DNA of 64,000 bases, from the NCBI RefSeq assembly GCF_006345805.1, contig NW_021834901.1:1-64000 (forward strand), written 5' to 3'. Source of the stretch: Octopus sinensis (Eukaryota). The notes under the pieces are model-generated. The model was not told where the DNA came from and searched no databases. It worked only from the letters and a program-made list of their open reading frames with translations. Shown here in pieces: positions 10,534-64,000 of this stretch (positions within the stretch are counted from its first letter, which is position 1; every line of letters begins with the position of its first letter). A program made the translations under genes and the position numbers.

Positions 10534-10721
10534 TATATATATATATATATATATATATCTTTGATAATGATGAAGAAGAGAGAGAGAGAGAGATAGAGAG
10601 AGAGAGAGATAGAGAGAGAGACAGACAGATAGAGAGAGAGAGAGATAGAGAGATACGCAAATATATATATATATAAATGTATATATATATATTTGTGTGT
10701 GTGTGTATGTGCGCGTATATA

Positions 10722-10753
<32 letters not shown>

Positions 10754-10827
10754 CATATATGGCTGCTATTTTTAGCAAGTTAAAATTACCTGTTAAAGGG
10801 TAATATTCTATTTTGAAATATATAAAC

Positions 10828-10878
<51 letters not shown>

Positions 10879-10918
10879 CGTGTGTGTGCGTGTGTGTGTG
10901 CGTGTGTGTGTGTGTGTG

Positions 10919-12832
10919 TGTGTAGTGTTGGCGAATCTCAGGAAGCATGGAAGTTTTGAAGGATGCAGTGCTCCGACAAGTAACAACTGATGCCGGCAGT
11001 TTGTTCCATGCTTGTATGTGTATGGAGGGGAGAAAATCAAGTGTAGTGTTGGCGAATCTCAGAAAGCATGGAAGTTTTGAAGGATGCAGTGCTCCGACAA
11101 CTAACAGCTGATGCCGGCAGTTTGTTCCATGCTTGTATGTGTATGGAGGGGAGAAAATCAAGTGTAGTGTTGGCGAATCTCAGGAAGCATGGAAGTTTTG
11201 AAGGATGCAGTGCTCCGACAACTAACAACTGATGCCGGCAGTTTGTTCCATGCATCAGCGTGTGTATGGAGGGGAGAAGATCAGGTGTAGTGTTGACGAA
11301 TCTCAGGAAGCATGGAAGTTTTGAAGGATGCAGTGCTCCGACAACTAACAACTGATGCCGGCAGTTTGTTCCGTGCTTGCGTGTGTATGGAGGGGAGAAA
11401 ATCAGGTGTAGTGTTGGCGAATCTCAGAAAGCATGAAAGTTTTGAAGGATGCAGTGCTCCGACAACTAACAACTGATGCCGGCAGTTTGTTCCGTGCTTG
11501 CGTGTGTATGAGGGGAGAAAATCAGGTGTAGTGTTGCCGAATCTCAGGAAGCATGGAAGTTTTTTTGAAGGATGCAGTGCCGACAAGTAACAACTGATGC
11601 CGGCAGTTTGTTCCATGCCTGCGTGTGTATGGAGGGGAGAAAATCAGGTGTAGTGTTGCCGAATCTCAGGAAGCATGGACGTTTTGAAGGATGCAGTGCT
11701 CCGAAAAGTAACAACTGATGCCGGCAGTTTGTTCCATGCTTGCGTGTGTATGGAGGGGAGGATATCAGGTGTAGTGTTGGCGAATCTCAGAAAGCATGGA
11801 AGTTTTGAAGGATGCAGTGCTCCGACAACTAACAACTGATGCCGGCAGTTTGTTCCATGCTTGCGTGTGTATGGAGGGGAGAAGATCAGGTGTAGTGTTG
11901 CCGAATCTCAGGAAGCATGGACGTTTTGAAGGATGCAGTGCTCCGACAACTAACAACTGATGCCGGCAGTTTGTTCCATGCTTGCGTGTGTATGGAGGGG
12001 AGAAAATCAGGTGTAGTGTTGGCGAATCTCAGGAAGCATGGAAGTTTTGAAGGATGCAGTGCTCCGACAACTAACAACTGATGCCGGCAGTTTGTTCCAT
12101 GCATCAGCGTGTGTATGGAGGGGAGAAGATCAGGTGTAGTGTTGACGAATCTCAGGAAGCATGGAAGTTTTGAAGGATGCAGTGCTCCGACAACTAACAA
12201 CTGATGCCGGCAGTTTGTTCCGTGCTTGCGTGTGTATGGAGGGGAGAAAATCAGGTGTAGTGTTGGCGAATCTCAGAAAGCATGAAAGTTTTGAAGGATG
12301 CAGTGCTCCGACAACTAACAACTGATGCCGGCAGTTTGTTCCGTGCTTGCGTGTGTATGGAGGGGAGAAAATCAGGTGTAGTGTTGGCGAATCTCAGAAA
12401 GCATGGAAGTTTTGAAGGATGCAGTGCTCCGACAACTAACAGCTGATGCCGGCAGTTTGTTCCATGCTTGTATGTGTATGGAGGGGAGAAAATCAAGTGT
12501 AGTGTTGGCGAATCTCAGGAAGCATGGAAGTTTTGAAGGATGCAGTGCTCAGACAATTAACAACTGATGCCGGCAGTTTGTTCCATGCTTGCGTGTGTAT
12601 GGAGGGGAGAAAATCAGGTGTAGTGTTGGCGAATCTCAGGAAGCATGGACGTTTTGAAGGATGCAGTGCTCCGACAACTAACAACTGATGCCGGCAGTTT
12701 GTTCCATGCTTGCGTGTGTATGGAGGGGAGGATATCAGGTGTAGTGTTGGCGAATCTCAGAAAGCATGGAAGTTTTGAAGGATGCAGTGCCCCAACAACT
12801 AATAACTGATGCCGGCAGTTTGTTCCATGCTT
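10919..12832 (-). repeat. 121-bp tandem satellite, array 1 (~16 units), derived from a CR1-type LINE ORF2 3' end
   Basis: ORF-track stops recur every 121 bp (11644, 11765, 11886 ...); unit reads AWNKLPASVVSCRSTASFKTSMLPEIRQHYT* on minus; at 12826-12853 it runs into FFTLRLAEAWNKLP. Confidence 0.95.
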
Positions 12833-12972
12833 CAGCAAGTCTCAGCGTGAAAAATTATATCGGAAATGAATAAGAGAAAATTAACTTGGTGGATTATTAC
12901 ACATACATAGTACAACAGGTCACATATCGACAAAAGGAAACTTGAAATTTCGAAGGAAATTATGATGTGCGT

Positions 12973-13021
<49 letters not shown>

Positions 13022-13849
13022 CTCAATAGTTTTTCTTTCCACATTAAATTCCAATATAATCGCAATTTACACACACTGTAACGTATTTGCAGAAAATTAC
13101 ATTAGAAAATAACCCATTTTTGTTAAAGTTCTGAGCAAACACAGACAATTCGTGTGAATTTTACGAAACTCATCTTTCCGCCCACAGACAAATTTGTTTC
13201 GCTACAAATTCCGATATAATCAGAATGATCACCATCTGAAGCGTATTAACAGAAAATTTAATTAAATATGGCCGTTTGGCGGGGAGTTATGAGGAAACAA
13301 ATTCGGTGCGTCGCACACATCTGTGAGAATGGCTGCCTTCCGAAGACGGGTCTTCTGCTGGAAATCGCTGTTCCAGTCGGAAAGCTTCTCGGATGTCCTC
13401 TCCCGCATCTGTGCGTGTTGGTGGGACATTACCATCAAATCCAAGCACCATTTGAGTCGTCTCTTTTCCTAACTAACATCTCTCTCTCTCACTCTCTCTC
13501 TTTCTCTAATTCTTTTTTCTTTCTTTCTCTCTGGGGGTTATGTTGCAGCCCTACCCAACCACCAGAATCATCCTCACCTGACCTAAGACCGACAATGACA
13601 GAGAAAGTAGCTGTCCATCTGCAGCTGACATGTACCCCAAGCCTCGACTCCTTGAAGCATCAACGGCTTAAAATGTGTAAGAAGCCGGTTCCCATTGTTA
13701 ACAGCGTGTAGGTCAACGGCAGACATATCTGGTCGGTGGTGGAAGATTGAGACAGATGCACAGGTATCTCGACGAAATTCAGCTGCGGGGAAGTGGCATC
13801 TGTCTTTACGATCAACCATGTGTTTCATTTTTCTTGAATCTTTTATTTA

Positions 13850-15400
13850 AATAAGAAATTTCAGTGTTTTTTCCCTTTTGTACAGACATATTGCGTTTAT
13901 TAAGTTGTCCAAAAATGTCTGACAAATAGAATAATTTGTATAACGAATCTTCATTGTGGAACAAATCTGAATTTAATCCCAGCAGGAATATTATGTCTTC
14001 ATCTTCTTAAAGTTCTAACAATTGTTTCAAAGCTTCTCCATTTCAGATTCATCACACTTCTGTTCTTCATAAAACTTTGCTGAAATTGGATGCCATTTTC
14101 TCACAGAAGAGGAAACTATTGAGAACAAGAATTTTAATAACGTTAATAATTTTAACCGCTTCTTGTAATATTGCAAAAGTATCTGGAAATATTTTCTGAG
14201 AAACAAACACCTCTCAGTGAAGATTGCAATAAGTGACAGAAATAGGGTTTTTATCTTACAAATTTAACTTGAACCCCAATTTCCCTCCTTATCATAGCTT
14301 CCGCATCTTTATTACATACTACATTACATTTATACCATCCAAGGCCTAGTTCTATCTCCCTTTTACTTGTTTCAGTCATTTGACTGCGGCCATGCTGGAG
14401 CACTGCCTTTAATCGAGGAACTCGATCCCCGGGACTTATTCTTTTATAATCCCAGTACTTATTCTATAGGTCTCTTTTGCCGAACCGCTAAGTGACGGGG
14501 ACATAAACACACCAGCATCGGTTGTCAAGCAATGCTAGGGGGACAAACACAGACACACAAACATATACACACACACAAACATATATATACATATATACGA
14601 CCGGCTTCTTTCAGTTTCCGTCTACCAAATCCACTCACAAGGTATTGGTTGGCCCGGGGCTATAGCAGAAGACACTTGCCCAAGATGCTACGCAGTGGGA
14701 CTGAACCCGGAACCATGTGGTTGGTAAGCAAGCTACTTACCACACAGCCACTCCTTCGCCTTTCGTCTACTTTTAGCTACAAAGTCCCCATCTTATGAAC
14801 CAATCTTCTTGGACCCTATTCTATATTACTATAGTTTGTAAGTTTTGCTGCTTCATCTAATTGAATTGCATGTTTAGAGACGTTGTTTAAAAACCTTCGC
14901 ATAATTTACTCCAATTAATCATTATTCATTTCTGAAATACAAATACCAACATTATCATTTCGCAGACGAACTTTGATTCATCTGCATGTTATTTCAATGA
15001 ATAATTCCTGATGTTTTCATTGCTGCTGCTAATACAAGTTCTTCGCCGATGTTGTTTGGGGTTTCTTTTATCTCTTGCAATTAAATAAACAGCTTCAAAA
15101 GATGCCCTTAAGTATTTCACTCTGTCTATTGAGTGAATAACTTGCTCAAGAGATTGCTTCTGTGTACTGATAGCCTTTCAAAACAATTCTATAGTCTTCT
15201 TATTATAAAGGAATGTCTTGAATCAAAACGTTTTAAATTTTTGTGGGCTTCATATTTTCAGACAACAAACAATTCTTACAAATAAAGCTGACCGGAATTC
15301 TTTCAATATTTGTCCAAAGTAAAAGTAAATCCATTATATTTCGTCTTTGCTCGTTCTGAAAGAATTACTTATTTCTGAATTCATGACACTCTTTCAAGTT
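13850..15400 (-). pseudogene. Decayed hAT (SPIN/Charlie/ZBED5-like) transposase, interrupted by a SINE
   Basis: Manual minus translation: LRASFEAVYLIARDK..IGEELVLAAAMK, HAIQLDEA, EAVKIINVIK..LNSFLFCEKMASNFSKVL*RTEV and LFHNEDSLYKLFYLSDIFGQLNKRNMSVQ, resembling the hAT IGEELILPAA, FALQLDES, LLLHTEVRWLS and LAYLADIFSHLNELNLSLQ motifs; many stops. Confidence 0.85.
14365..14757 (-). mobile_element. Full-length OR-like tRNA-derived SINE
   Basis: Minus head aggagtggctgtgtggtaagtagcttgcttaccaaccacatggttccgggttcagtccc with A/B-box-like motifs and the typical internal (CA/TA) tract. Confidence 0.88.
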
Positions 15401-18363: not shown

Positions 18364-18411
<48 letters not shown>

Positions 18412-24355: not shown

Positions 24356-24387
<32 letters not shown>

Positions 24388-25903: not shown

Positions 25904-25934
<31 letters not shown>

Positions 25935-26578
25935 GTACGCCGGGCGAAACGTTTAGAAGTATTTCGTCTGCGGTTACGTTCTGAGTTCAAATTCCACCGA
26001 GTCCAAATTCCACCGAGGTCGATATTGCCTTTCATCCTTTTGTAGTCGATTAAATAAGTACCAGTTACGCACTGGAGGCGATATAATCGACTTAATCAGC
26101 GTGTCTGTCCTTGTTTGTCCTCTCTGTGTTTAGCCCCTTGTGGGTAGTAAAGAGATAAGTATTTCGTCTCTCACTACATTCTGAGTTCAAATTCCGCTTA
26201 GATCGACTTTGCCCTTCATCCTTTCGGAGACGATAAATTAAGTACCAGTTACACACTGGGATCGATGTAATGGACTTGTCCTTGTGCTTCCAGTAGACAG
26301 GATAATAATAATAATAATAATAATAATTATTATTATTATTATTATTATTATTTGAGGTTTAGCTGGCAGAATCGTTAGCACGCCGGGCAAAATGCTTGGT
26401 AGTATTTCATCCATCATTAGTTTCTGAGTTCAAATCCCCCGAGGTCAACTTCACATTTCAACATTTCGAGGTCTATAAATTAAATACCAGTTGAGTACTA
26501 GGGGCTATGTAATCGACTAACTCCCCCCATCCAAGAATATGTCAGGCTTTGTGCTTATAGTAGGAACGACTATTATTA

Positions 26579-26627
<49 letters not shown>

Positions 26628-26910
26628 CATTATTATTATTATTATTACTATTAGTATAAATTCTTTCGTCTCACATACTGTGATCTCCTCAGCGACTCTC
26701 TGCTACGCCTTTTTCTTCTTATCCTGCTTATTCTGTATTAAAATTTATATTAAATGTCTACTTTTCTACTGTTTGTCAAGTGGTTTGTTTATCAAATAAT
26801 TTATACTCGGAACAATTGTACAAACGGAATTTCCCACTTGGTGCAGCAGCTATATTTTAGTAATTGTTTGAATGAATACACGCACATACACAACTCACTT
26901 ATATGTTTGT

Positions 26911-26986
<76 letters not shown>

Positions 26987-27109
26987 GTGTGTGTGTGTGT
27001 GTGTGTGTGTATGTATATATATATAAGCATAGTAGAAATATGTTAAAGAAAGAAAATATAAAATACACGTGGAAATGTAAGGATAAAGATGATATATGTA
27101 TATGTATAA

Positions 27110-27183
<74 letters not shown>

Positions 27184-27432
27184 CTTTTAGTGGGGGGCAA
27201 CCAGATCGAACCTTCCCAAGGTTACTGCCCGAGATGGTCGTGACTTGTGTGGGACTTGACTGAGGAAAGAGAGCGTTATTTTTTTACCATTTATATAAGT
27301 ATGTATGTGGTGTGTGTGTGTGTGTGTGTATGTGTGTGTGTGTATGTGTGTGTGTGAGTATGTGTGTGTGTGTGTTTCAATCTATGTATTGAAGTTTCTG
27401 TTTGTTTATCTGTCTAATTATTTTTCGAATTG

Positions 27433-27466
<34 letters not shown>

Positions 27467-29570
27467 CTTTCCCTCTCTCTTGTTCCACACTTTCATTTTC
27501 TCTCTCTTTTCTCTCTTTTACTTTCTCTCTTACTCTCTCTCTCTCTCTCTCTCCGTAATGCTATTTTTAGTGTGCTGGTGCTGCTTGTAGGAACTTTAAT
27601 CATTAATTAATGATGCCTTACCTTATGGCATTTTTTACGCATGCTTGCCACTTGATAATATTTAAGCAATAATATCTTATATATACATATATATATAGTA
27701 TATATACATATATATATATATATATAATATATTATATATATATATATATGCATTATATACACAGGTATGTATGATTGTGTATAGGAGAATATATTACTGA
27801 AAGAAATTCCAACTTTGATTTTCATGATTTATTTACAATCCTATAATAATATATGATAAGATAAGATAACATAATGAAGCGATAGAATATCAAATATCCA
27901 CTCTGATTGAACTAGTACTTTCATGCATTCTTCAAGTTGTATAAAAATAGTTATTGTCTGCATCATTCCAAAGAGAAATAAAGTCTCCATAAAGTGTAAA
28001 AGTTAGAAATAATTTGTATGGTGTTAGTAACAAAAATATTTTTTTAGAAATAGGATTATTATCATCGGTCTTAAATTTAATCTCGCCAGTGTAGATATGT
28101 GTGTGTATAAATATCAATTTTAAATATTTACAGGAAAGTAGCAAAAATTGATTTACATTTACAATGCCGGTTTCAAATATGACTTCAGTATTAATTTTTT
28201 ACAGAAATTAGAAAAGGTTTATCCACTTATCTGAATATTCTATTACCTCATGAAAGTTTATTGTCTCATTTTGCGGCTTGTATCGGATAAGAATACTGAC
28301 CGAAGTACACATTTGTTATAACCCGTTATGTGTTTTTTTAACGGCAGTGTCAGTATTTTCTGTCGATGTATGTTATTCGCTGTACTTTAATATCCGGAAA
28401 ATAAATCCATTTTCCAGAAATTCACCATTTCTACACGACGCAAAGTAATATAAGATGAGGTGATTTGCTTAAGAACGCAATACAATTCCCTTTACGGGGA
28501 TTGAAACCGGGATCTCGCTATCGCGAATGTAACACCGTTAACAGCGTGGTCATTCGCCTTGGACACCAATTATATTATTTAACATGTTATATGACATAGG
28601 TGGGACAGCATCCCAGAATCCTTCTTATCTACTAGGCGTTTTCCCGAAGCAACACCCACTGAGTTACATGGATCCCGAGGAAAATCTGAGCGTTACTCCT
28701 AAGTGATGTCTCTTGTCAGCTAACGATATGGCGTTGTATCATGTAATGATGAAGAAGTCTGACGCAGAAAATTGCGTTGTTGATGTGGTGATACAGTCTG
28801 AGAACGAGGCCAATTTTAGGTACCTATCTTTGTTTGTTTTTTTGTTGTTTACTTAGGGTGTTGTTGTCGACGTTGTTGTTTGCCCTGACTGATCGTAATT
28901 TTGCACAAAGGCATTCCAATTATACCCTACTATTATTTTTATTCAAACATTAGCAACCATGTCCTCCATTGTCTAAAATAAGAGTGTGTGATTGGAAAGA
29001 GATTTCGCAGGTATCTCAAGGTGTTTGATGGAAAACATTGTAAACATATCTGCGTCACAAGCCAATGTTTCCTGATTGAGTAAAGCTATGGTCAGAGGAC
29101 ATCCAGTCGTCATCTTCACACCATTTAGTTATATAGCATTGTCTCCGGTCTCTAGGTGAGCAGGATTTTCCATGAATTCAACTGCTTCAGCACACATGCA
29201 ACCAAAACCCATAGGGCACTTGTGTGTAGACTACTAAATACATGCTTCCACCACCTCAGATCTGAATGCTTCGCCATCTTCCCATCCCCGCCAGGACTTT
29301 CGAATGAAAAATAAGTTGTACAGTTTAAAAGTATAGAGCTTAAATTAAAAAGATAATATTAAACAAGAATATCCAAGCAACATAGTCGGCAATGCCTGTA
29401 CACAATGCCTGTACACAAATTTACAAATTGCTTTGCAGCGCTTCTGTCGGCTATTCGCGTTCTGAGTTCCTTTCCCGCCGAAGTCCCCTTTGCATTTCAT
29501 TTCTCAGAGGAGCTGAAGTCCAATTAGTCGACTGACCACTTCCCCCACAAAACAACAACCACTGGCATTC
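21771..29570. repeat. Segmental duplication copy of 1-7770
   Basis: Collinear match at an offset of ~21.8 kb; lacks the SINE at 6995. Confidence 0.95.
22760..23700 (-). pseudogene. Paralogous decayed R4/Dong RT fragments (shorter copy)
   Basis: Same sequence as 990-2130 with an internal segment missing near 23100-23130. Confidence 0.8.
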
Positions 29571-29787
29571 TACCTAAGCCAGAGTAAACATTATATGAGC
29601 GGCAATCTAGGATTTCAGGACAAAGAATTGCTACGCGGTGTTATATGTAATCATGTCTGGTTATATAAAAATGCATCGGGATATATATACATACACAAAC
29701 ACGAACAAATATATGTGCGTGTATGTGTGTGTGTGTAAGTGTACCTGTGTGTGTATGTGAATGTGAATGTGTGCAAATATGTACGTT

Positions 29788-29839
<52 letters not shown>

Positions 29840-32800
29840 GGCGTAAAGCCCGGTGAGTGATTTGGTAGACAGAAACTTAAAGAAGCCCGTCGTTTATATG
29901 TATATATATGTGCGTGTGTGTGTCTATATGTTTCTATGTGTTATTTTATTGGTCACTTTTGCCGATCCGCTATGTTAAGGGTGGGTGTTATGGTTGCTTG
30001 GAACCAAATGCTCACCGACAAATTATCGTCAGAAATTAAATAAGTTTTCTCCACTTATCTGAATATTCTATGGCCTCATATAAGTTTTTGATCGATTATT
30101 GGGATGGCGATATCTCATTTCTCTAGTTACTAAAATGCAAAACCGACGAATTTCCCTCCTTTCCCAGAATATATTTCAGTTGGTTGTAAATTATGCTTGT
30201 TGTTCACTGATGACAAGGCTATGATCAGAGGCGTTTCGGTCATGATCATCCCGTCGATTTACTTACTTCACAATATGTGTTGTGTTCTTTCCTTGGTTAA
30301 ATCGGTAGGGTGTGAGACAATTGAATATCATTGTCTCAAATGCTTACGATAGGGCTGATAGCGCAAATGTTCAAGTAATGGACATTCACTAGTCCTGAAA
30401 CCTACACCGACAATCATTATTCTAATACATCACATGATGTGGATGTTAATTTTTATAGATCTTTCCGAAATATAAGTCCGACCTTACTATCAAGATGAAG
30501 CATCAATTTATTAAATGACATCTAGGATTGAATTATTCTGCTACTAGCAGAAGAATGAAAGTGATATTCTACGTGGTTTACTCTGCATGTGTGTTAATAT
30601 ATTGTAACCTTCATGTACATGGGTTATCTCAAGTAAAACATAGCCTCGAATGTTTAGGACGTCCAGTTCACTCTGTGTAACTTGCCACAGGAGTCACACA
30701 GCAGATGCAGGTACAAGATGTTAAAGACTGTACTAATTCCTAAGTTGTTCACTTGAGCATCCGCATACCAATTATTATTATTCGATATACACAAAAAACT
30801 TTAGATTGTCTGAGTACGTTCGCGTATATATATATATATATATATAATATATATATGTATATATATATATATTTATATTAATGTATATATATATATTAAT
30901 GTATATGTGGGCGTCTATGTGCATCTGTGTGTGTGAGTACATGCACAAGTGTTCGGCTTTTAACATACACACACATACACACACACGCACACGATCACAC
31001 ATATTTGTATATATATATATATATAAAAATATTCATACGCATTCAGAGATCTACACACACATATAAATAGTGTATTCTCTTTAATTCTTTTACTTGTTTA
31101 AGTCATTTGACTGCGGCCTTGCTGGAGTACCACCTGAAAAGCGTTTAAGCCGAAGAGCCGAAGAAATTTACAGTTGGGCTTAGTTTTTGTAAGCCTGGTA
31201 CATATTTTATTCGTCGCTTTTGCCGAACAGCTATGTTAAGGCGGGAGTAAAAGACCTGCTCTCAAGCTGTGAACGGGTAGCAAACATAGTCACACAGACA
31301 CACACGCACAGGTAAACACACACACACACTCACACACGCGCGCGCGCGCACCACATATACACTCACAGACACACTCACACACACATATGTATATATATAT
31401 ATATAACGGACTTCCTTCGGGTACGTCTACAATACCCACCCACAAGTCTTTGCTCGGCCCGAGGCTATAGTAGAAGACATTTTCCCACTTTCCCTATAGT
31501 AGAAGACACTTTCCGTGGTTAATTCGGTAGGGTGTGAGACAATTGAATATCATTGACTCAAATGCTTACGATAGGGCTGATAGCGCAAACGTTCAAGTAA
31601 TGGACAATCATTAGTCCTGAAACCTACACCTGCAATCATTATTGTAATACATCACATGATGTGGATGTTAATTTTCATAGATCTCTCCGGAATATAAGTC
31701 CGACATTACAATTAATTTTTGCTTAGAAACTCTGTCTCCCTTTTCAGCTTCCTTTCAGCAACCATAACCATGTCTCAATATTACTATTTCCTGCAACTAT
31801 CTTTGCCAATCGACCATGCCATACATTCTCTTGTCAGTTAGATTATCTTCCTACTTTTTTTATTGTTTTAATTTCATTTGCCTTTTTCCTTTCCTATCTC
31901 CTACTATAAATCAGGCAAGTCATAAATTTTATTCACTATTATATATATCAATTCTAGCTAACTCTACGCTACTTTCTGCTGATATTAAACCGCTTCCACC
32001 TTCGTTATTCTAAGTAAGTGCAATCTTGCTCTTCGTAATCGAGGCTGAAGTCCTCCATTCATATCGAATTCCTTCCTTGTCCTTCTGTCAAGATTTGCAA
32101 ATTGAGATCTTTTCCAATCAACAAAATCTGCTGAATACCGAAGTAACCATACTTCCCAAAGTTTTTACAACCTTTACTAGATTTAGAACACTAAGCTTTC
32201 CCTTCATTAGCTTCTTCACCCTTCGAGTGTACTCCTTATCTATTCCATTGTTAGTACACTCTCAGATTCTAATACTCCGAAGCACTTATGATTCTCTGCC
32301 TTCAGTGATTTTACTCTCTTGCTATCTGGCCTTCACTGCTGACTACCTGTCCCCTTCTTATGACTTGTGTTGCGCACATATCTATGCCAAATTCCATGCC
32401 TATATCTTTGCTGAAGAGTCTTACAATTCGTATTAAGGAACCAAAAAGCTTCTAATCGTCCATCTTGAGCAAATGATTAATATTTCTTTAACATCTCTAA
32501 ACTGATACCCTGACTTTGCCTTTAGTAGTACTAAATTGACGACAGCTAAGCATAAGAACTATTAAAGAGGTAACGAGTCTCTGGAGAATTCCTCACCTGA
32601 TATTAACTTTTCCTAAGACACAGTGTCACCTGAGTAGAGATATAATTTCCAATTCTTTACACTATAGCTGTAACTAATTAAGTCTCTTGTGTTGTCTGCA
32701 ACACTGAATATACTCAAAATTCACTTATCCGTGAGTGTTGAATCATGCCAATGATTTTTATACCGTTGAAGTTTGCATTCTCGATTTTAGAACTGCTTTC

Positions 32801-35050
32801 TCTGTGTGTAATAGATCGTGCGTTCCTCAACCTTCTTTCTGCAAACATTTCAGTTTTTCTGGTAACAATTTCTTGTTGGTCAAGTTGCTTCTAAATGTTT
32901 TCTGTGTGAATTCATGTTAAAGTCTCTACATTGGGAAATTGCCTGGTTTTTGTCTATTTTGGCTTTTATGTAGTTAGTTATGAATGCCTGATCGTGTGCA
33001 GTTGCTTACAGACAATTTCTCCCTTTTCATTTTCCTTTCTGAAACCATATTAGTCTGTAAGTGTCCCTTGGCTTTTCTTTCTGTACCCTTTCTGTTCCAC
33101 TGGTGCTTTGTAATTTATTTCCAGGAAATCATACACCTAATTAGATATTATTCCTGTCATCAGCTTCCACATGAGGGGCAAACAGGTGATAGGCCGGTGA
33201 TTATCCACTGCATTGCTTTGTTGGGATTCTTTTGGCAAAGAATTGTTTGACTTTTGGTCAGCCTCTTTGGGATTTGTACCCCGTTGTTGTTCATTTTATA
33301 TATTTGGTTGGCTATTCTTCTGTGTAGTGCTGGGGAAATTTTCAGCCAATATCCTTGTACAGTATCCGGTCCTGGGTATTTCCAGTTTGGCGATTTAATC
33401 ACTCTGGCCCACATTGGTAGTCAAATATACAATAAGGCGACTGGCGTTTATACATCTGCCTTTTCTCATCCTTACTTACTAAAAACATCCCTCCTCACTT
33501 CTCCCTTCTACTCACTTAATTAAATTTAACTCTCTATAATAATATACGATGACTATGCGAGAATTTGTATGTGGTGTGTCTGTGCGTGCAAACAGACATT
33601 TATCTGTCCATTTCTAAACTCATACGTATGGATGTGTATGTATTTTCGCGTAATTGTGTGTATCTGACTGTGTGTATATCAACGGGAATATGCCACTGCA
33701 TATGTGTGTGTGTCTGTGTGTGTTTGCATATGTTAGTGCGTGTGTGTATGTGTATGTCTCTCTGTGTATGTATGTGTGTGTATACATGCATCCCCTTAAC
33801 CCCCAAGTCAAACACCCCTCACTATATAGACTAATCTCTATATACTCTCATATATTTCTCATTCGCCCAATAATAGACTCTTCCAAGGCCTTCCAAATCT
33901 GATTCAATTTCTATTCAAAGATGCAACTGATAACTTCCATTATCCTTTGCCAGCGACTTTCCTGGAAACTTTACTAACTCTTCGATCACGAAAATACCAA
34001 ACACATTTATCTGTGTTGGTGTGCTTACGTCACTGTAACATAGCGGTTCGGTAAAAGAGACCGATAGAATAAGTTCTAGGCTTACAAATATTAAGTCCTA
34101 GGGTCGATTTGTTCGAATGAAGGCGGAGCTCCAACATGGCTGCAGTCAAATGACTGAAACAAGTAAAAGAATAGTCACGATGGGCTTCTTTCAGTTTCCA
34201 TCGACCAAATCCGCTTATGAAGATTTTGAGAGTCCAATGGCTACGGTAGAAGACATGTGCGTGGTGAGCCACGCAGTGGAAATGAACCCGAATCTAGATT
34301 TGGAAGCAAGCATCTAACCACACAGCCGCGCCTAAACATGCCCCCCTACACAGATTCAATCCAAGGAAACACGCATAAAGATGAAACACTCTCCAAGCCG
34401 TTCACTTTATAATTTGTTAAAACCATTAACATGGTGTCCATTAGTTAGTAATGCTGTGTTTTGTTTTATTTCTCCTACACATTGATTCCAAATTTTGGCA
34501 CAACACCAGCAATTTCGGGAGAGGGAGTAAGTTGATTGCATCGACCCCAGTACTTAACTGATATTGATTTCATCGACCCCGAAAGGATAAAAGGCAAAGA
34601 CAACCTCGGCGGAATATTTCTACTTAATATTTAATATTATTTCGTTCATGCATTTTTGAAATTGGGTGTTAAAACAGAAATTCTCCTATTTGGAGATGGT
34701 CGTCTGTTGCCAATGAAAACACACGCAATATATATTTGATCTTCACTTTTTTATTATGTTGTTGTCGTTGTTGTTGTTGTTATTATTGGTACGCCGGGCG
34801 AAACGCTTAGAAGTATTTCGTTTCCCCGAAGGCGGTGAGCTGGCAGAAACGTTAGCACGTCAGGCGAAATGCTTAGAAGGATTTCGTCTGTGGTTATGTT
34901 CTGAGTTCTAATTCCGCCGAGGTTGACTTTGCCTTTCATCATTTCGATGTCTATAAATTAAATACCAGTTCTGTACTAGGGGCTATGTAATCGACTAACT
35001 CACTCCCAAAAAGATTTCAGGCCTTGTGCCTATAGTTGGAACGACTGTTA
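29570..35050. repeat. Further, more diverged segmental copy (29570-31490 matches 18130-19990; 31510-35050 matches ~500-4510)
   Basis: Collinear anchors; deletion junction at ~31490-31515; homology ends in the (ATT)n array. Confidence 0.9.
32000..33470 (-). pseudogene. Paralogous decayed R4/Dong RT fragments (longest copy, keeps the catalytic block)
   Basis: ORF 33160-33414 SPNWKYPGPDTVQGYWLK; minus reading near 32380-32490 gives INHLLKMDD*KLF..LFSKDIGMEFGID. Confidence 0.85.
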
Positions 35051-51029: not shown

Positions 51030-51790
51030 CTTCTTATTCTCTTACTTGTTTCAGTCGTTTGACTGCGACCATGCTGGAGCACCGCCTTTAGTCGAGCAAA
51101 TCGACCCCGGGGCTTATTCTTTGTAAGCCTAGTACTTATTCTATCAGTCTCTTTTGCCGAACCGCTAAGTGACGGGGACGTAAACACACCAGCATAGGTT
51201 GTCAAGCAATGCTAGAGGGACAAACACAGGCATATAAACATATACACATATGCATTACATATATACGACAGGCTTCTTTCAGTTTCTGTCTACCAAATCC
51301 ACTCACAAGGCATTGGTTGGCCTGAGGCTTAAGCAGAACACTTGCCCAAGGTGCCACGCAGTGGGACTGAACCCGGAACCATGTGGTTGGTAAGCAAGCT
51401 ACTTACCACACAGCCACCCCTAGTCTATATACATATATACGACAGGCTTCTTTCAGTTTCCGTCTACCAAATCCACTCACAAGGCATTGGTTGGCCTGAG
51501 GCTATAGCAGAAGACACTTGCCCAAGATGCCACGCAGTGGGACTGAACCCAGAACCATGTGGTTTGTTAGCAAGCTACTTACCACACAGCCACCCCTAAG
51601 TCTATATACATATATACGACAGGCTTCTTTCAGTTTCCGTCTACCAAATCCACTCACAAGGCATTGGTTGGCCTGAGGCTATAGCAGAAGACACTTGCCC
51701 AAGATGCCACGCAGTGGGACTGAACCCAGAACCATGTGGTTGGTTAGCAAGCTACTTACCACACAGCCACTCTTACGTCTATGTATATAT
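51030..51790 (-). mobile_element. OR-like SINE whose head region is tandemly triplicated (~175-bp unit)
   Basis: atatacgacaggcttctttcagttt at ~51261, ~51434 and ~51611, each ending ttaccacacagccac. Confidence 0.9.
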
Positions 51791-52165
51791 ATATGCACAC
51801 ACATACATACACAGCTGCTCTACTGGTTGTCATCACCCTTAAGATGAAACTTTAAGTTAACAGTTCAAGGGCAATAACTCTTGTAGAATAAGAAGTATTA
51901 CCTCCCTTAATGTAGTTAATTAAATTCTCTCGTTTGGGTCAAATTTTTCTTTCCGTCCTTCATTGACAATAAAACGAAGTGGTAAAGGTCGCTTCTTGCG
52001 TGTGTATGTTCGAGTGTAACTCAAACCGTTGATTCACTTCCCCTTCTCTGACGCAGATAACCGTCTCTTTCGTGGGCCACAATATAAACATCCCGCCAAT
52101 TTTGGCGAGTGTGTCCGTGTTTCAGTGGAATTGCTCAAACGGTGATTCGAAATCGATCCGCTTAC

Positions 52166-56880: not shown

Positions 56881-57089
56881 TTGTCCGTCAATGTCTCGGC
56901 TAATTAATTTGCTCAATTAAGAACTACACAGTAATTATGTAATTAATGGTTAGTTAAATAATTAGCTTCTGGTAAAATAATTAGCGAGAGAGAAATTTGA
57001 AGGTAAATCTGAAAATATAATTTATTTGTAAGAAAGTAAGGTTTCTTAGGGATAAAAGGAGAGGAAGAGGGAGAGAGTAAGATATAAGG

Positions 57090-58200
57090 AGGTGGGGGAG
57101 ATAGAGAGAGAAAGAAAGGAAGAAAGAGTGAGAGAGAGAAAGCCTAGGGAAGGGGAGGGATATATTAATGTATGAGGAAGGAGAGAAAGAATGAGAGTGG
57201 GAGAGAGAGAGAGAGAGAAAGAAAGGAAGAAAGAGTGAGAGAGAGAGAAAATAGGGAAAGGAAGGGATATATTAATGTATGAGGAAGCAGAGAAAGAATG
57301 AGAGGGGGAGAGAGAGAGAGAGAGAGAATGCGTGAGAGAGAGAGAGAGAGAGAAAGAAAGGAAGAAAGAGTGAGAGAGAGAGAAAATAGGGAAAGGGAGG
57401 GATATGTTAATGTATGAGGAAGCAGAGAAAGAATGAGAGTGGGAGAGAGAGAGAGAGACAGTATGCGTGAGAGAGAGAGAGAGAGGAAGGAAGAAAGAGT
57501 GAGAGAGAGAAAGCCTAGGGAAGGGGAGGGATATATTAATGTATGAGGAAGCAGAGAAAGAATGAGAGTGGGAGAGAGAGAGAGAGAGACAGAATGCGTG
57601 AGAGAGAGAAGAGAAAGGAAGAAAGAGTGAGAGAGAGAAAGCCTAGGGAAGGGGAGGGATATATTAATGTATGAGGAAGTAGAGAAAAAATGAGAGTCGG
57701 AGAGAGAGAGAGAGACAGAATGCGTGAGAGAGAGAGAGAGAAAGAAAGGAAGAAAGAGTGAGAGGGTGAAAGCCTAGGGAAGGGGGGGATATATTAATGT
57801 ATGAGGAAGCAGAGAGGGGGAGTGAGAGTGTGAGAGAGAGAGAGAGACAGAATGCGTGAGTGAGAGAGAGAGAAGAAGGAAGAAAGAGTGTGAGAGAGAA
57901 ACCCTAGGGAAGGGGAGGGATATATTAATGTATGAGGAAGCAGAGAGTGGGAGTGAGAGTGGGAGAGAGAGAGAGACAGAATGCGTGAGAGAGAGAGAGA
58001 GAGAGAGATAGAAAGGAAGAAAGAGTGAGAGAGAAGAGAGAGAATGCGTGGAGAGAAGAGAAGAAAGAAAGGAAGAAAGAGTGAGAGAGAGAAAGCCTAG
58101 CGAAGGGGAGGGCTATATTAATGTATGAGGAAGCAGAGAAAGAATGAGAGTGGGAGAGAGAGAGAGACAGAATGCGGGAGAGAGAGAGAGAGAGAGAGAG
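57090..58200. repeat. GA-rich minisatellite, about 8 units of 110-190 bp
   Basis: Core tagggaaggggagggatatattaatgtatgaggaag recurs about 8 times with variable (GA)n spacers. Confidence 0.9.
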
Positions 58201-58539
58201 ATACAGTTAGTGAGGGAGAGGAAGAGGTGAAGGCTTTTGCAAGGGAGGTGGGCGGTGATTAAAATGAATATATAATGAGGTTCTGAGAGAAAGGAGACAA
58301 AGAGGGAGAAGTGGGAGGATATGTTTTGTAGGGGAGGGAGAAAGAGTATGAAAATGCATTAAGGGTTTAGTGAGGTACAGACAGAGGGAATTAAGAGTAA
58401 AAGCAAGGGAGGGGGAAGCATTTGGTAATATATGAGGAGGTGGGAGAGGGAGGCGAAGAGAAAGAGACAAAGAGGGAGAGCGCGCTTATTGGACGATATA
58501 TATTTAGTAATAGGGGAAGGGTATGAGTTAATAAAGAAA

Positions 58540-59401
58540 GCAAAATGGGCGGAGTCAGTCTACATTATGCAAAGTGGTGGGAGGAGTCAACGTTGAAGGG
58601 GTAAGAACAATAACTCTTATTGAATCCCTTTTCGCTTTAAATTCTATTTTTTTCTTTCGCAGAATTTGAAGATTTCCAAAAATGATTTAATGTAAATAAT
58701 AGATCGAAGGGTTTAATATTGCAATTCTTAGCCCTTAATTTCCTCCTCGTAATCTTCACACTGCACCCTGCACCTATTGTGGATGCAGCTGCTAGAAATA
58801 GCAGCCAAACATCGCATACTAAATGAAACCTCTGATTTCTTTAATTGCTTCAAAATTTATTAAGTTGAGGAAAAAGTTCGTGCGTTTGGTCTTTATTTTG
58901 AAGAATATTTGTTGCTTTTGAATAAATTCTTGCATAAAACAATCATTATTTTAACACGACGCACAGACATTTCCCTCAATCTAATAGTTTCTATTTTATA
59001 ATTGGCATTTGGTCAGATAACTGCAAAGATTAGCCATTGACTGTCCACTACAAAGAGAAGGGGGCAAGAATATGCAATGAAAGTGCAGTTAAGTGCAGCC
59101 GTGCACTGGTTGTTGTCCTATTTTAAGCTGCAAAAATGTGAAAGTAAACTTCGAGAAGGAAAGGGATCAGACCGGAAGTGATGAGAATAGAACAGGAAAC
59201 AAGTGAATGCCATCTAACGGAGAACAATTCAGCTCATAGTGACGACGCCTCTACCACCGAAACATCTCGACACACTGTTTTTACTCATCGCAGGCCGGTC
59301 TCATGGATGTGTGACGGAGCTGTGTTGCGGGGAAACAGCTACGAGAACGGAAATCGACGGAAATTGACGCATCTCGACGGTTATGAAGGAGTTCAGTGAG
59401 T
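58540..59401 (+). promoter_or_regulatory. Candidate promoter and first exon
   Basis: GC box GGGCGGAGT near 58546, ETS consensus ACCGGAAGTG at 59171-59180, CpG-rich 59230-59390, donor-like CA|GTGAGT at 59395/59396. Motif evidence only. Confidence 0.3.
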
Positions 59402-59689
59402 AGATATTAAATGCCTTTCGGTATTGCTTCAGATGTTTGACACCCGAATTTTCTGCCTCAGAGCTTCCAGAAAATGGAGATTTTAAATTATATTTTCGAA
59501 AACTGAGCTTCTGATGCTGTAAATTGCGATTATATCGGAATATTTGATGAAAACATTTTTCCTTCTTCGATGTTAGGAGTTTTGGAAAATTCACACAAGG
59601 CGTCTGGCTTTCTTCACAACTTTCAGAAAAATAGTAAATTTTTAATGGAATTTTCTATAAATGCCTTTCAGAGTGTATCGATTACAATT

Positions 59690-59855
59690 ATAAAATAATA
59701 ATAAAAATAATGAAATTATTGTATACAGTGCTCAGGTGCACCACCACTTGTCAGAAAGTGGGTATAAAGTGTATGCAGTAATGTACAAATGTATGGAAAG
59801 CGAACAGTGTATGAGTCAGATACATGCTTGCGTATGTATGGAGGGGAGGACATCA
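59690..59855 (-). mobile_element. CR1-type LINE 3' UTR and (ATT)n-like tail, contiguous with satellite array 2
   Basis: After the terminal unit the minus strand continues caagcatgtatctgactcatacactg..cacctgagcactgtatacaataatttcattatt(tt)attattatt. Confidence 0.8.
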
Positions 59856-62800
59856 GGTGTAGTGTTGGCGAATCTCAGAAAGCATTGAAGTTTTGAAGGA
59901 TGCAGTGCTCCGACAACTAACAACTGATGCCGGCAGTTTGTTCCATGCTTGTGTGTGTATGGAGGGGAGGAAATCAGGTGTAGTGTTGGTGAATCTCAGG
60001 AAGCATGGAAGTTTTGCAGGATGCAGTGCTCCGACAACTAACAACTGATGCCGGCAGTTTGTTCCATGCTTGCGTGTGTATGGAGGGGAGAAAATCAGGT
60101 GTAGTGTTGGCGAATCTCAGAAAGCATGGAAGTTTTGAAGGATGCAGTGCTCAGAAAATTAACAACTGATGGCGGCAGTTTGTTCCATGCTTGCGTGTGT
60201 ATGGAGGGGAGGAAATCAGGTGTAGTGTTGGCGAATCTCAGAAAGCATGGAAGTTTTGAAGGATGCAGTGCTCAGACAATTAACAACTGATGCCGGCAGT
60301 TTGTTCCATGCTTGCGTGTGTATGGAGGGGGGGAAATCAGGTGTAGTGTTGGCGAATCTCAGAAAGCATGGAAGTTTTGAAGGATGCAGTGCTCCGACAA
60401 CTAACAACTGATGCCGGCAGTTCGTTCCATGCTTGTGTGTGTATGGAGGGGAGGAAATCAGGTGTAGTGTTAGCGAATCTCAGGAAGGATGGAAGTTTTG
60501 AAGGATGCAGTGCTCCGACAACTAACGACTGATGCCGGCAGTTGTTCCATGCTTGTGTGTGTATGGAGGGGAGGAAATCAGGTGTAGTGTTGGCGAATCT
60601 CAGGAAGCATGGAAGTTTTGAAGGATGCAGTGCTCAAACAATTAACAACTGATGCCGGCAGTTTGTTCCATGCTTGCGTGTGTATGGAGGGGAGGAAATC
60701 AGGTGTAGTGTTGGTGAATCTCAGGAAGAATGGAAGTTTTGAAGGATGCAGTGCTCAGAAAATTAACAACTGATGCCGGCAGTTTGTTCCATGCTTGAGT
60801 GTGTATGGAGGGGAGGAAATCAGGTGTAGTGTTGGTGAATCTCAGGAAGAATGGAAGTTTTGAAGGATGCAGTGCTCAGACAACTAACAACTGATGCCGG
60901 CAGTTTGTTCCATGCTTGAGTGTGTATGGAGGGGAGGAAATCAGGTGTAGTGTTGGTGAATCTCAGGAAGAATGGAAGTTTTGAAGGATGCAGTGCTCAG
61001 ACAACTAACAACTGATGCCGGCAGTTTGTTCCATGCTTGCGTGTGTATGGAGGGGAGGAAATCAGGTGTAGTGTTGGTGAATCTCAGGAAGAATGGAAGT
61101 TTTGAAGGATGCAGTGCTCAGACAATTAACAACTGATGCCGGCAGTTTGTTCCATGCTTGCATGTGTATGGAGGGGAGGAAATCAGGTGTAGTGTTGGTG
61201 AATCTCAGGAAGGATGGAAGTTTTGAAGGATGCAGTGCTCAGACAATTAACAACTGATGCCGGCAGTTTGTTCCATGCTTGAGTGTGTATGGAGGGGAGG
61301 AAATCAGGTGTAGTGTTGGTGAATCTCAGGAAGGATGGAAGTTTTGAAGGAGGCAGTGCTCAGACAATTAACAACTGATGCCGGCAGATTGTTCCATGCT
61401 TGCGTGTGTATGGAGGGGAGGAAATCAGGTGTAGTGTTGGTGAATCTCAGGAAGAATGGAAGTTTTGAAGGATGCAGTGCTCAGACATTAACAACTGATG
61501 CCGCAGTTTGTTTCCATGCTTGAGTGTGTATGGAGGGGAGGAAATCAGGTGTAGTGTTGGTGAATCTCAGGAAGGATGGAATTTTGAAGGATGCAGTGCT
61601 GCAACCACTAAACTGATGCCGGCAGTTTGTTCCATGCTTGAGTGTGTATGGAGGGGAGGAAATCAGGTGTAGTGTTGGTGAATCTCAGGAAGAATGGAAG
61701 TTTTGAAGATGCAGTGCTCAGAAAATTAACAACTGATGCCGGCAGTTTGTTCCATGCTTGTGTGTATGGGGAGGGGAGGAAATCATGTAGTGTTGGTGAA
61801 TCTCAGGAAGGATGGAAGTTTTGAAGGATGCAGTGCTGCAACCTCTAACAACTGATGCCGGCAGTTTGTTCCATGCTTGAGTGTGTATGGAGGGGAGGAA
61901 ATCAGTGTAGTGTTGGTGAATCTCAGGAAGGATGGAAGTTTTGAAGGATGCAGTGCTGCACACTAACACTGATGCCGGCAGTTGTTCCCTGCTTGAGTGT
62001 GTATGGAGGGGAGGAAATCAGGTGTAGTGTTGGTGAATCTCAGGAAGGATGGAAGTTGTGAAGGATGCAGTGCTCAGACAATTAACAACTGATGCCGGCA
62101 GTTTGTTCCATGCTTGCGTGTGTATGGAGGGGAGGAAATCAGGTGTAGTGTTGGTGAATCTCAGGAAGAATGGAAGTTTTGAAGGATGCAGTGCTCAGAC
62201 AATTAACAACTGATGCCGGCAGTTTGTTCCATGCTTGCGTGTGTATGGAGGGGAGGAAATCAGGTGTAGTGTTGGTGAATCTCAGGAAGAATGGAAGTGT
62301 TGAAGGATGCAGTGCTCAGACAATTAACAACTGATGCCGGCAGTTTGTTCCATGTTTGCGTGTGTATGGAGGGGAGGAAATCAGGTGTAGTGTTGGTGAA
62401 TCTCAGGAAGAATGGAAGTTTTGAAGGATGCAGTGCTCAGAAAATTAACAACTGATGCCGGCAGTTTGTTCCATGCTTGAGTGTGTATGGAGGGGAGGAA
62501 ATCAGGTGTAGTGTTGGGGAATCTCAGGAAGAATGGAAGTTTTGAAGGATGCAGTGCTCAGACAATTAACAACTGATGCCGGCAGTTTGTTCCATGCTTG
62601 AGTGTGTATGGAGGGGAGGAAATCAGGTGTAGTGTTGGTGAATCTCAGGAAGGATGGAAGTTTTGAAGGATGCAGTGCTGCAACCACTAACAACTGATGC
62701 CGGCAGTTTGTTCCATGCTTGCGTGTGTATGGAGGGGAGGAAATCAGGTGTAGTGTTGGTGAATCTCAGGAAGGATGGAAGTTTTGAAGGATGCAGTGCT

Positions 62801-64000
62801 GCAACCACTAACAACTGATGCCGGCAGTTTGTTCCATGCTTGAGTGTGTATGGAGGGGAGGAAATCAGGTGTAGTTTTGGTGAATCTCAGGAAGGATGGA
62901 AGTTTTGAAGGATGCAGTGCTCAGACAATTAACAACTGATGCCGGCAGTTTGTTCCATGCTTGCGTGTGTATGGAGTGGAGGAAATCAGGTGTAGTGTTG
63001 GTGAATCTCAGGAAGAATGGAAGTTTTGAAGGATGCAGTGCTCAGACAATTAACAACTGATGCCGGCAGTTTGTTCCATGCTTGCGTGTGTATGGAGGGG
63101 AGGAAATCAGGTGTAGTGTTGGTGAATCTCAGGAAGAATGGAAGTGTTGAAGGATGCAGTGCTCAGACGATTAACAACTGATGCCGGCAGTTTGTTCCAT
63201 GTTTGCGTGTGTATGGAGGGGAGGAAATCAGGTGTAGTGTTGGTGAATCTCAGGAAGAATGGAAGTTTTGAAGGATGCAGTGCTCAGACAATTAACAACT
63301 GATGCCGGCAGTTTGTTCCATGCTTGCGTGTGTATGGAGGGGAGGAAATCAGGTGTAGTGTTGGTGAATCTCAGGAAGAATGGAAGTTTTGAAGGATGCA
63401 GTGCTCAGACAATTAACAACTGATGCCGGCAGTTTGTTCATGCTTTGTGTGTATGGAGGGGAGGAAATCAGGTGTAGTGTTGGTGAATCTCAGGAAGGAT
63501 GGAAGTTTTGAAGGATGCAGTGCTTGCAAACCACTAACAACTGATGCCGGCAGTTTGTTCCATGCTTGAGTGTGTATGGAGGGGAGGAAATCAGGTGTAG
63601 TGTTGGTGAATCTCAGGAAGAATGGAAGTTTTGAAGGATGCAGTGCTGCAACCACTAACAACTGATGCCGGCAGTTTGTTCCAAGCTTGAGTGTGTATGG
63701 AGGGGAGGAAATCAGGTGTAGTGTTGGTGAATCTCAGGAAGATGGAAGTTTTGAAGGATGCAGTACTCAGACAATTAACAACTGATGCCGGCAGTTTGTT
63801 CCATGCTTGCGTGTGTATGGAGGGGAGGAAATCAGGTGTAGTTTTGGGAATCTCAGAAGGATGGAAGTTTTGAAGGATGCAGTGCTGCAGACCACTAACA
63901 ACTGATGCCGGCAGTTTGTTCCATGCTTGAGTGTGTGGAGGGGAGGAAATCAGGTGTAGTGTTGGTGAATCTCAGGAAGAATGGAAGTTTTGAAGGATGC
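59856..64000 (-). repeat. 121-bp tandem satellite, array 2 (at least 34 units, runs off the window)
   Basis: Same unit and orientation as 10919-12832. Confidence 0.97.

What the first reader, a model, noticed from the sequence alone, without database searches (positions are those of the whole stretch)
59690..64000. 121-bp satellite born from the last codons of a CR1-type LINE through a 7-bp microhomology
Seen: the unit encodes AWNKLPASVVSCRSTASFKTSMLPEIRQHYT*. Array 1 ends (12826-12853) in upstream LINE sequence FFTLRLAEAW; array 2 ends (59690-59829) in a 3' UTR with an (ATT)n-like tail. The heptamer AAGCATG occurs both in the ORF (GAAGCATGGAAC; plus-strand CATGCTT at 12826-12832) and in the UTR (CAAGCATGTATC; 59823-59829), one unit apart, and marks the unit boundary. 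Known: WNxLP..VV....FK is the usual CR1-clade ORF2 C-terminus. Inference: slippage or unequal exchange at the heptamer seeded a satellite. Both parental junctions are visible in one window.
Basis: partly seen in the sequence, partly recalled or inferred. Interest (0 to 1): 0.75.

Follow-up and report, generated by a model that had tools for sequence, protein, structure and literature searches.

The report
LINE-tail 121-bp satellite in octopus
The 121-base tandem repeat is an amplified piece of the tail of a very abundant jumping gene (a LINE), cut out between two copies of AAGCATG. This is a well-documented example of a known way that satellite DNA is born, and here it has happened more than once from the same LINE tail.

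Summary
Two arrays of a 121-bp unit lie at 10920-12832 and at 59823-64000. The second runs to the contig end, so it has at least 75 units.

On the minus strand the unit is the last 31 codons, the stop codon and about 25 UTR bases of a LINE. An intact 995-aa copy of the LINE's ORF2 carries endonuclease and reverse-transcriptase domains. In 25 of 25 single-unit genomic copies, the two AAGCATG sites are exactly 121 nt apart.

All window-type arrays that have these flanks sit at one and the same insertion site, inside a multi-kb low-copy duplicated segment. Paralogues of that segment are empty or hold 1, 3, 5, 11, about 32 or at least 75 units. This points to one 5'-truncated insertion that expanded and then spread by segmental duplication. 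Exact matches to this junction lie within 0.03-1.15 Mb of scaffold C29, on unplaced contigs, and at one separate array on C28.

A sister 123-bp form has its junction 2 nt upstream. It occurs on at least eight other scaffolds. Seven two-unit copies have seven different 5' truncation points, so a duplicated LINE lineage carried it by retrotransposition.

This is a new member of a known kind. An earlier report of this scan (s1-106310) already covered array 1.

The parts
10920..12832 (-). Array 1: 15.8 units of 121 bp. In LINE sense the junctions read native ORF first, then type A (CGC|AAGCATGG) with point variants, plus two B-like junctions.
12826..12832 (-). ORF-side heptamer (AAGCATG in LINE sense, codons E-A-W) at the 5' edge of array 1.
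12833..12855 (-). The 22-23 nt of LINE ORF2 upstream of the heptamer (FFTLRLAE). This is the 5'-truncated end of the founder insertion.
12856..15157 (.). Flank 'Xright'. It is part of a multi-kb low-copy duplicated segment and is contiguous with Xleft in empty-site paralogues. It is interrupted by a block of about 400 bp at 14354-14759 that those paralogues lack.
10835..10928 (.). (TG)n microsatellite that replaces the 3' side of array 1 (UTR, tail and Xleft are missing here).
58442..59689 (.). Flank 'Xleft' of the same duplicated segment. It abuts Xright directly in the empty-site paralogues.
59690..59822 (-). Unrepeated remainder of the LINE 3' UTR, with the ATT-like tail at about 59690-59716.
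59823..59829 (-). UTR-side heptamer AAGCATG, 121 nt downstream of the ORF-side one in the parent element.
59823..64000 (-). Array 2: 34.7 units inside the window, at least 75 units to the contig end (C11372:68901).

Best explanation
The 121-bp arrays are a satellite derived from the 3' end of an abundant, young LINE whose ORF2 has an APE endonuclease and a reverse transcriptase and looks CR1-like. One copy of about 263 bp, truncated 22 nt upstream of the ORF heptamer, inserted into a multi-kb low-copy duplicated segment. The element carries AAGCATG twice, 121 nt apart: once in codons E-A-W of ORF2 and once 25 nt past the stop codon. A misalignment between these two sites duplicated the 121 nt between them. 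This step is inferred, and I favour replication slippage or unequal sister-chromatid exchange on DNA. Once two units existed, ordinary unequal exchange grew the array. The array then spread with its host segment by segmental duplication near one end of scaffold C29 and on unplaced contigs. The window holds two such paralogous copies. The unit has no coding capacity: 121 is not a multiple of 3 and each unit carries the stop codon.
For: The parent element is real. At least 1999 DNA candidates and 37,496 protein-level candidates were found, copies are 92-97% alike, and 5' truncation points vary. An intact 995-aa ORF2 has Exo_endo_phos and RVT_1 domains. The heptamers are 121 nt apart in 25 of 25 single-unit copies. 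Xleft and Xright are directly contiguous in four fetched empty sites (L037, L038, L040, L046), and two more are implied by coordinates. At the identical site, with the identical truncation, paralogues hold 1 unit (L047/L048), 3 (L043, L049, L050), 5 (L039), 11 (L051), about 32 (C29:690406-694400) and at least 75 (window). In these arrays the first junction is native ORF and the following ones are type A. Exact type-A junctions occur only on C29 at 0.03-1.15 Mb, on unplaced contigs and at one C28 locus, so they are not scattered like retrotransposed copies. Unit identity falls with distance along the array, and the sister-type array L052 shows a private junction variant in 12 of 13 junctions. 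Both fit growth in place.
Against: The only one-unit paralogue (L047/L048, probably one locus assembled twice) has a 27-bp UTR deletion that starts at the heptamer. It may therefore be a collapsed array rather than the ancestral state. Flank trees are unresolved, so filled copies are not shown to form a clade nested among the empty ones. An independent type-A array (L053 on C28) has other flanks and truncation at -28, and the 123-bp form was demonstrably carried by retrotransposition. An origin during or before reverse transcription therefore cannot be excluded for the 121-bp form.
Confidence: 0.68

Rival explanations
1. The duplication arose on RNA or cDNA. Either the LINE reverse transcriptase switched template between the two AAGCATG sites during target-primed reverse transcription, or the inserted RNA already carried repeated units. 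In that case the founder insertion was multi-unit from the start, and the one-unit paralogue is a later collapse.
For: For the sister 123-bp form, seven two-unit copies (L055-L061) have seven different 5' truncation points, unrelated flanks and normal ATT tails. One copy (L059) is truncated inside the first unit. Six of 8 dimers share a G at one site where 21 of 22 single-unit copies have A. L053 is an independent type-A array with its own truncation point. The one-unit X copy has a deletion that starts at the heptamer.
Against: Exact type-A junctions are absent from scaffolds C1-C27. Apart from one C28 locus, they are confined to 0.03-1.15 Mb of C29 and to unplaced contigs. Seven further LINE copies taken at random with respect to unit number were all single-unit.
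Confidence: 0.24
2. The 121-bp (type A) junction is secondary. It arose inside a 123-bp (type B) array by recombination between an internal junction and the native UTR heptamer at the array's 3' end, and was then homogenised.
For: L062/L063 (C29:33.8 kb) reads native-B-B-A, with the A junction next to the UTR, as this route predicts. B-like junctions occur sporadically in array 1 and in L039.
Against: In every X-family array whose 5' end was fetched, the junction right after the native ORF is type A or a point variant of it, not type B. The rare B-like junctions are internal or 3'-terminal.
Confidence: 0.05
3. The arrays are assembly artefacts, that is, mis-joined or inflated repeats on an unplaced contig.
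For: The window lies on an unplaced contig. Contig C13108 duplicates the start of array 2 at 100% identity. Array 2 runs off the contig end.
Against: The same unit and junction occur at many placed loci with both flanks assembled. Contigs from independent public runs bridge the unit-to-unit junction (records 8 and 15).
Confidence: 0.03

Closest known systems
Chicken HinfI repeat containing a CR1 fragment (Li and Leung 2006, as tabulated in PMC9659126)
   Same: A tandem repeat whose unit holds the 3' UTR and part of ORF2 of a CR1-family LINE.
   Different: Here the unit is only 121 bp. Its boundaries map to a 7-nt direct repeat inside the element, and empty, one-unit and multi-unit paralogues of the founder site are all present in one genome.
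Common cetacean satellite related to the 3' end of L1 (PMC9659126, its reference 82)
   Same: A satellite monomer derived from the 3'-terminal part of a LINE.
   Different: It comes from a different LINE clade, is old and is of Mb scale. Its parental junctions are no longer visible.
Double-insertion model for TE-derived satellites in Drosophila (McGurk and Barbash 2018, PMC5932611)
   Same: Tandem TE dimers act as seeds that unequal exchange expands into arrays.
   Different: In that model the unit is a whole (possibly truncated) element including its end. Here the unit boundaries are internal, at a microhomology, and the unit lacks the tail and most of the UTR. The L053 locus does show a second LINE copy inserted just behind the first copy's tail, but that pairing is not what repeats.
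Other LINE-tail arrays noted earlier in this same genome (s1-109844, s1-109996, s1-105993, s1-106310)
   Same: The last codons and first UTR bases of a LINE are amplified in tandem. One earlier case was read as retro-copied.
   Different: Those mostly concern RTE-type elements. This report adds the paralogue series, the second junction register and the retrotransposed dimers for the AWNKLP LINE.

Membership tests
TE-derived satellite (LINE 3'-end-derived tandem array) | Head-to-tail units with a constant period | tested here: met
   Period 121, 94-95% matches, 15.8 and 34.7 copies in the window
TE-derived satellite (LINE 3'-end-derived tandem array) | The unit is colinear with one contiguous stretch of a dispersed element | tested here: met
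   Single-unit LINE copies hold the unit flanked by upstream ORF and downstream UTR plus tail
TE-derived satellite (LINE 3'-end-derived tandem array) | Direction of derivation: the element is the parent and the array is the derivative | tested here: met
   The element is genome-wide, includes copies with an intact ORF2 and shows variable 5' truncation. Arrays begin with native ORF and end in native UTR, and empty-site paralogues exist
CR1-group LINE | ORF2 with an APE endonuclease and a reverse transcriptase | tested here: met
   L070:336-3320, 995 aa: Exo_endo_phos E=5.5e-13, RVT_1 E=8.5e-36
CR1-group LINE | C-terminal FF..R....WN.LP..V signature preceded by the VRP.LE...W / VQRRA..R block | tested here: met
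   Seen in the translations. That this signature marks the CR1/L2/Rex1 group is my own recall, not a tool result. Pfam has no model for this region
CR1-group LINE | Short-repeat 3' tail instead of poly(A), frequent 5' truncation, little or no target-site duplication | tested here: met
   (ATT)n tails. Truncation points range from 41 to more than 750 nt. The empty versus filled site shows at most 1-3 ambiguous bases
CR1-group LINE | Reverse-transcriptase phylogeny places it in the CR1 clade | not tested
   No reference RT set was at hand. PMC13282606 lists CR1 families among recently active LINEs of Octopus vulgaris, but this element was not matched to them
Classical satellite DNA (long heterochromatic arrays) | Very long arrays at cytologically defined heterochromatin, centromere or telomere | not testable with these tools
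   The longest assembled arrays are 9-12 kb. There are 401 type-A and 844 type-B junction matches. No cytology is available
Retro-mobilised tandem repeat (repeat carried inside a retrotransposing element) | The same repeat junction at unrelated sites with independent 5' truncation points and normal 3' tails | tested here: met
   Met for the 123-bp form only: L055-L061, L008, L052, L054, L062. Not met for the window's 121-bp form

The most novel reading that the evidence does not exclude
The imperfect direct repeat GC(TG)AAGCATG ... GCAAGCATG in this LINE's tail is a recurrent template-switch hotspot. The LINE's own reverse transcriptase would use it to make tail multimers during insertion. In that reading an active LINE lineage both creates satellite seeds and scatters them across chromosomes, and some seeds then grow into arrays of 10 kb or more.
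Probability: 0.25. Interest if true: 0.55.

Novelty: new member of a known kind. Interest (0 to 1): 0.36.

Why it matters
How a dispersed mobile element turns into a tandem satellite is usually inferred long after the junctions have decayed. Here one genome preserves all of the following:
- the parent element;
- both parental junctions;
- the empty target site;
- a graded series of 1 to at least 75 units at one founder site;
- a sister form that is carried as a dimer by retrotransposing copies.

This makes the locus a convenient natural system for two questions. The first is whether the initial duplication happens on DNA or during reverse transcription. The second is how satellite seeds reach new chromosomes. 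It does not reveal a new principle.

Tried and rejected
- **Flank phylogeny.** Maximum-likelihood trees of 380-bp 5' and 3' flanks were made to ask whether filled copies nest among empty ones and whether the one-unit copy is basal. Both trees were star-like and unresolved.
- **Higher-order repeat.** I looked for one in array 2. Two unit haplotypes are interspersed without strict periodicity, and identity simply decays with distance.
- **Hairpin as a cause of breakage at the UTR heptamer.** A small local stem-loop appears in the RNA fold, but the region folds no better than shuffles (z -0.35 for RNA, +0.42 for DNA). Not supported.
- **Reads.** The one raw-read DNA run (X22) laid only 33 reads, all on the AT-rich tail, and none on the LINE, so it gave no depth or junction information. 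The other three runs are contigs. They show the LINE and junction-bridging pieces but cannot show expression. X15 is only guessed to be RNA. No claim about transcription is made.
- **Uniform 5' end.** A first impression that the element is a discrete 350-bp retroposon was an artefact of using L009, itself truncated, as the reference. All-against-all comparison shows variable truncation.
- **Pfam on the last 197 aa of ORF2.** No family was found.
- **Double insertion.** Rejected as the origin of the 121-bp unit, because the unit lacks the tail and most of the UTR.
- **Bulk genome fetch.** The census of loci is therefore partial.
Full report
**1. Observation**

Tandem Repeats Finder reports a 121-bp period at 10920-12832 (15.8 copies, 94% matches) and at 59823-64000 (34.7 copies, 95% matches). 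The window is bases 1-64000 of an unplaced contig, C11372, of a 2.72-Gb genome. Array 2 runs on to the contig end at 68901, so it holds at least 75 units.

Read on the minus strand, the edge of array 1 translates as I*FFTLRLAEAWNKLPASVISCWGTASFKTSMLSEIRQHYT*. CATGCTT (AAGCATG in LINE sense) sits at 12826-12832 and 59823-59829, and then recurs every 121 bp. Left of array 2, positions 59690-59822 are a non-repeated stretch that ends in an ATT-rich tail.

**2. The parent element**

A 261-bp query made of UTR plus one unit finds at least 1999 candidate places in the genome. The 28 best that lie outside this locus are 94-96% identical over the whole query. In them the sequence upstream of the unit continues as ...TTTTTCACGCTGAGAGTTGCTG|AAGCATGG.., and downstream it runs through the UTR into (ATT)n.

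The 5' ends differ from copy to copy, from 41 to more than 750 nt upstream of the heptamer, as expected for 5'-truncated LINE insertions. An earlier impression of a fixed 5' end was an artefact of a truncated reference copy.

A protein search with the last 197 codons gives 37,496 first-look candidates. The 150 scored hits are 90-94% identical (apart from the query's own locus), with open frames up to 997 aa. One natural 995-aa frame (L070:336-3320) has Exo_endo_phos and RVT_1 domains.

The C-terminal region (..VRPHLEFASPVW..VQRRATKRI..TRGH.YKV..FFTLRVAEAWNKLPASVV..FK..) matches what I recall as the signature of the CR1/L2/Rex1 group. Pfam has no model for this region, and I did not run a reverse-transcriptase phylogeny. 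CR1 families are listed among recently active LINEs of Octopus vulgaris (PMC13282606). Earlier notes of this scan call the genome Octopus sinensis, which I did not verify.

**3. The microhomology**

In 25 of 25 single-unit copies the two heptamer sites are exactly 121 nt apart. AAGCATG is intact at the ORF site in 23 copies and at the UTR site in 20. The array junction reads ..CACACGC|AAGCATG|GAAC.., that is, UTR sequence on the left and ORF sequence on the right.

**4. One founder site, many states**

The flank right of array 1 (Xright, from 12856) and the flank left of array 2 (Xleft, to 59689) each have about 15 close paralogues in the genome at 84-97% identity.
- **Empty sites.** In four fetched loci (L037, L038, L040, L046) Xright and Xleft are directly contiguous (..CCGATATA|AATTGTAATCG..), with nothing between them. 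Two more are implied by coordinates.
- **Filled sites.** At exactly that point other paralogues hold the same LINE fragment, truncated 22 nt upstream of the ORF heptamer. Unit counts are 1 (L047/L048), 3 (L043, L049, L050), 5 (L039), 11 (L051 at C29:0.753 Mb) and about 32 (C29:690406-694400, both flanks on one array).
- **No clear target-site duplication.** At most 1-3 bases are ambiguous.
- **Extent of homology.** Homology between these loci extends for at least 1.5 kb on each side, including an AG-rich 135-bp repeat. The host is therefore a multi-kb duplicated segment, not a small mobile element.

The window holds two partial paralogues 47 kb apart in the same orientation. Array 1 keeps the 5' (ORF) junction and Xright, and its 3' side is replaced by (TG)n. 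Array 2 keeps the 3' (UTR) junction and Xleft, and its 5' side lies beyond the contig end.

**5. Distribution of the 121-bp form**

The type-A junction with up to one mismatch has 401 matches. Exact matches on numbered scaffolds are only on C29 (0.03-1.15 Mb of a 17-Mb scaffold) and at one C28 locus. All other exact matches are on unplaced contigs. The common point variant (..CACACACAAGCATGG..) has 93 exact matches, again only on C29 at 0.69-1.15 Mb and on unplaced contigs.

The 121-bp form thus spread locally with its duplicated segment, not by retrotransposition. The C28 array (L053: native ORF, then 5 type-A junctions, UTR and tail) has unrelated flanks and a different truncation point (-28). 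It is an independent locus.

**6. A sister 123-bp form**

Arrays on C24 and C27 have a 123-bp period. Their junction lies 2 nt further upstream (..CACACGC|TGAAGCATGG.., type B). The two parental sites are in fact an imperfect 9-of-11 direct repeat, GC(TG)AAGCATG versus GCAAGCATG. Exchange in the GC part gives type B, and exchange in the AAGCATG part gives type A.

Type B has 844 matches. Among the first 100 exact matches there are at least 22 loci on C2, C14, C20, C21, C23, C26, C27 and C28, ranging from single junctions to arrays of 6 and 12 kb.

Seven single-junction loci (L055-L061) are two-unit LINE copies. They have seven different 5' truncation points (one inside the first unit), unrelated flanks and ordinary ATT tails. 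Six of 8 dimers share a G at one UTR site where 21 of 22 single-unit copies have A. The simplest reading is that a LINE lineage carrying a duplicated tail retrotransposed repeatedly.

Longer B arrays then grew in place. In L052, 12 of 13 junctions carry a private variant (..CGCTTAGGCATGG..). L062/L063 reads native-B-B-A, so a type-A junction can also arise at the 3' end of a B array.

A third array type has a 337-bp period with other boundaries in the same LINE tail. It occurs on C12126 (L004).

**7. Mechanism**

These points are shown:
- the unit is a LINE-tail segment bounded by the heptamers;
- the arrays with the X flanks share one insertion site and one truncation point;
- unit number varies from 0 or 1 to at least 75 among paralogues;
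- the 123-bp dimer was retrotransposed.

This point is inferred: for the window's 121-bp form, the first duplication happened on DNA after insertion, by slippage or unequal exchange at the 7-nt repeat, and unequal exchange and segmental duplication followed.

The inference is weakened by the one-unit paralogue. It has a 27-bp UTR deletion that starts at the heptamer, so it could be a collapsed array. The flank trees are also unresolved.

A breakpoint at the 3' edge of the UTR heptamer recurs three times: in the duplication, in this 27-bp deletion, and in an 18-bp deletion in the intact copy L070. This hints at a fragile or switch-prone point. However, folding gives no significant structure there.

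Template switching by the LINE reverse transcriptase remains a live rival. I put it at about one in four.

**8. Reads**

Public runs from four coded organisms hold up to half of the sampled words. Contigs from three runs cover the flank and the LINE, and some bridge the unit-to-unit junction (records 8 and 15). The single raw-read run laid almost nothing. Nothing can be said about expression.

**9. Comparison and novelty**

LINE-derived satellites are well known. Examples are the chicken HinfI repeat with the CR1 3' UTR and partial ORF2, and the cetacean satellite related to the L1 3' end (both in PMC9659126). TE dimers as satellite seeds are described in PMC5932611. I found no paper describing octopus satellites of this kind.

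Earlier reports of this scan describe several LINE-tail arrays in this genome, and one (s1-106310) covers array 1 itself with the same reading. What this report adds is the empty/1/3/5/11/32/75 paralogue series, the confinement of the 121-bp form to 0.03-1.15 Mb of C29, unplaced contigs and one C28 locus, and the retrotransposed 123-bp sister form.

The verdict is a clean and well-documented new member of a known kind, of moderate interest.

Noticed in passing
window 1-6991 vs 21771-29039; 16312-18532 vs 27712-29981; 31509-34821: The window is built from large segmental duplications at 92-96% identity. The 9.3-kb block 6991-16312, which contains array 1 and Xright, is absent from the paralogous copy. 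It is bracketed by 1.3-kb direct repeats (5660-6991 and 16312-17625).
   Followed up: partly
window 8091-10540: Three tandem copies of a unit of about 840 bp (about 96% identity) lie just left of the (TG)n that truncates array 1.
   Followed up: no
window 51256-51793: A 177-bp unit is repeated 3.1 times (95% matches). From memory its sequence looks like the common octopus SINE, so this may be another dispersed element caught in tandem.
   Followed up: no
window 57203-58034 (and 57089-58199): An AG-rich repeat of about 135 bp (6.3 copies) lies next to Xleft. The same repeat lies beside the empty-site paralogues (for example L037:1-271), so it belongs to the duplicated segment.
   Followed up: partly
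L004 (G000:C12126:9978-13234): A third array type comes from the same LINE tail. It has a 337-bp period and at least 5 units, and joins UTR ..CTGCATAT to ORF GCAGACACCC.., so its boundaries differ from those of the 121- and 123-bp forms.
   Followed up: partly
L053:1932-2214 (G000:C28, about 1.876 Mb): A second, single-unit copy of the same LINE tail sits about 20 bp behind the ATT tail of the type-A array. This looks like tail-targeted insertion.
   Followed up: no
L070:3340-3360; L047/L048: The UTR right after the AAGCATG heptamer is prone to indels. There is an 18-bp deletion in an otherwise intact LINE copy and a 27-bp deletion in the one-unit X paralogue, and both start at the heptamer.
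   Followed up: partly
G000:C13108:1-5709: This contig duplicates the start of array 2 and its left flank at 100% identity in reverse orientation. It is probably a redundant contig or haplotig. C11052 likewise mirrors C27:18.286 Mb.
   Followed up: no
run X22: A raw-read genomic run labelled with the same species as the best holders laid no reads on a LINE tail that has thousands of copies. Either the label or the filtering of that run is odd.
   Followed up: no
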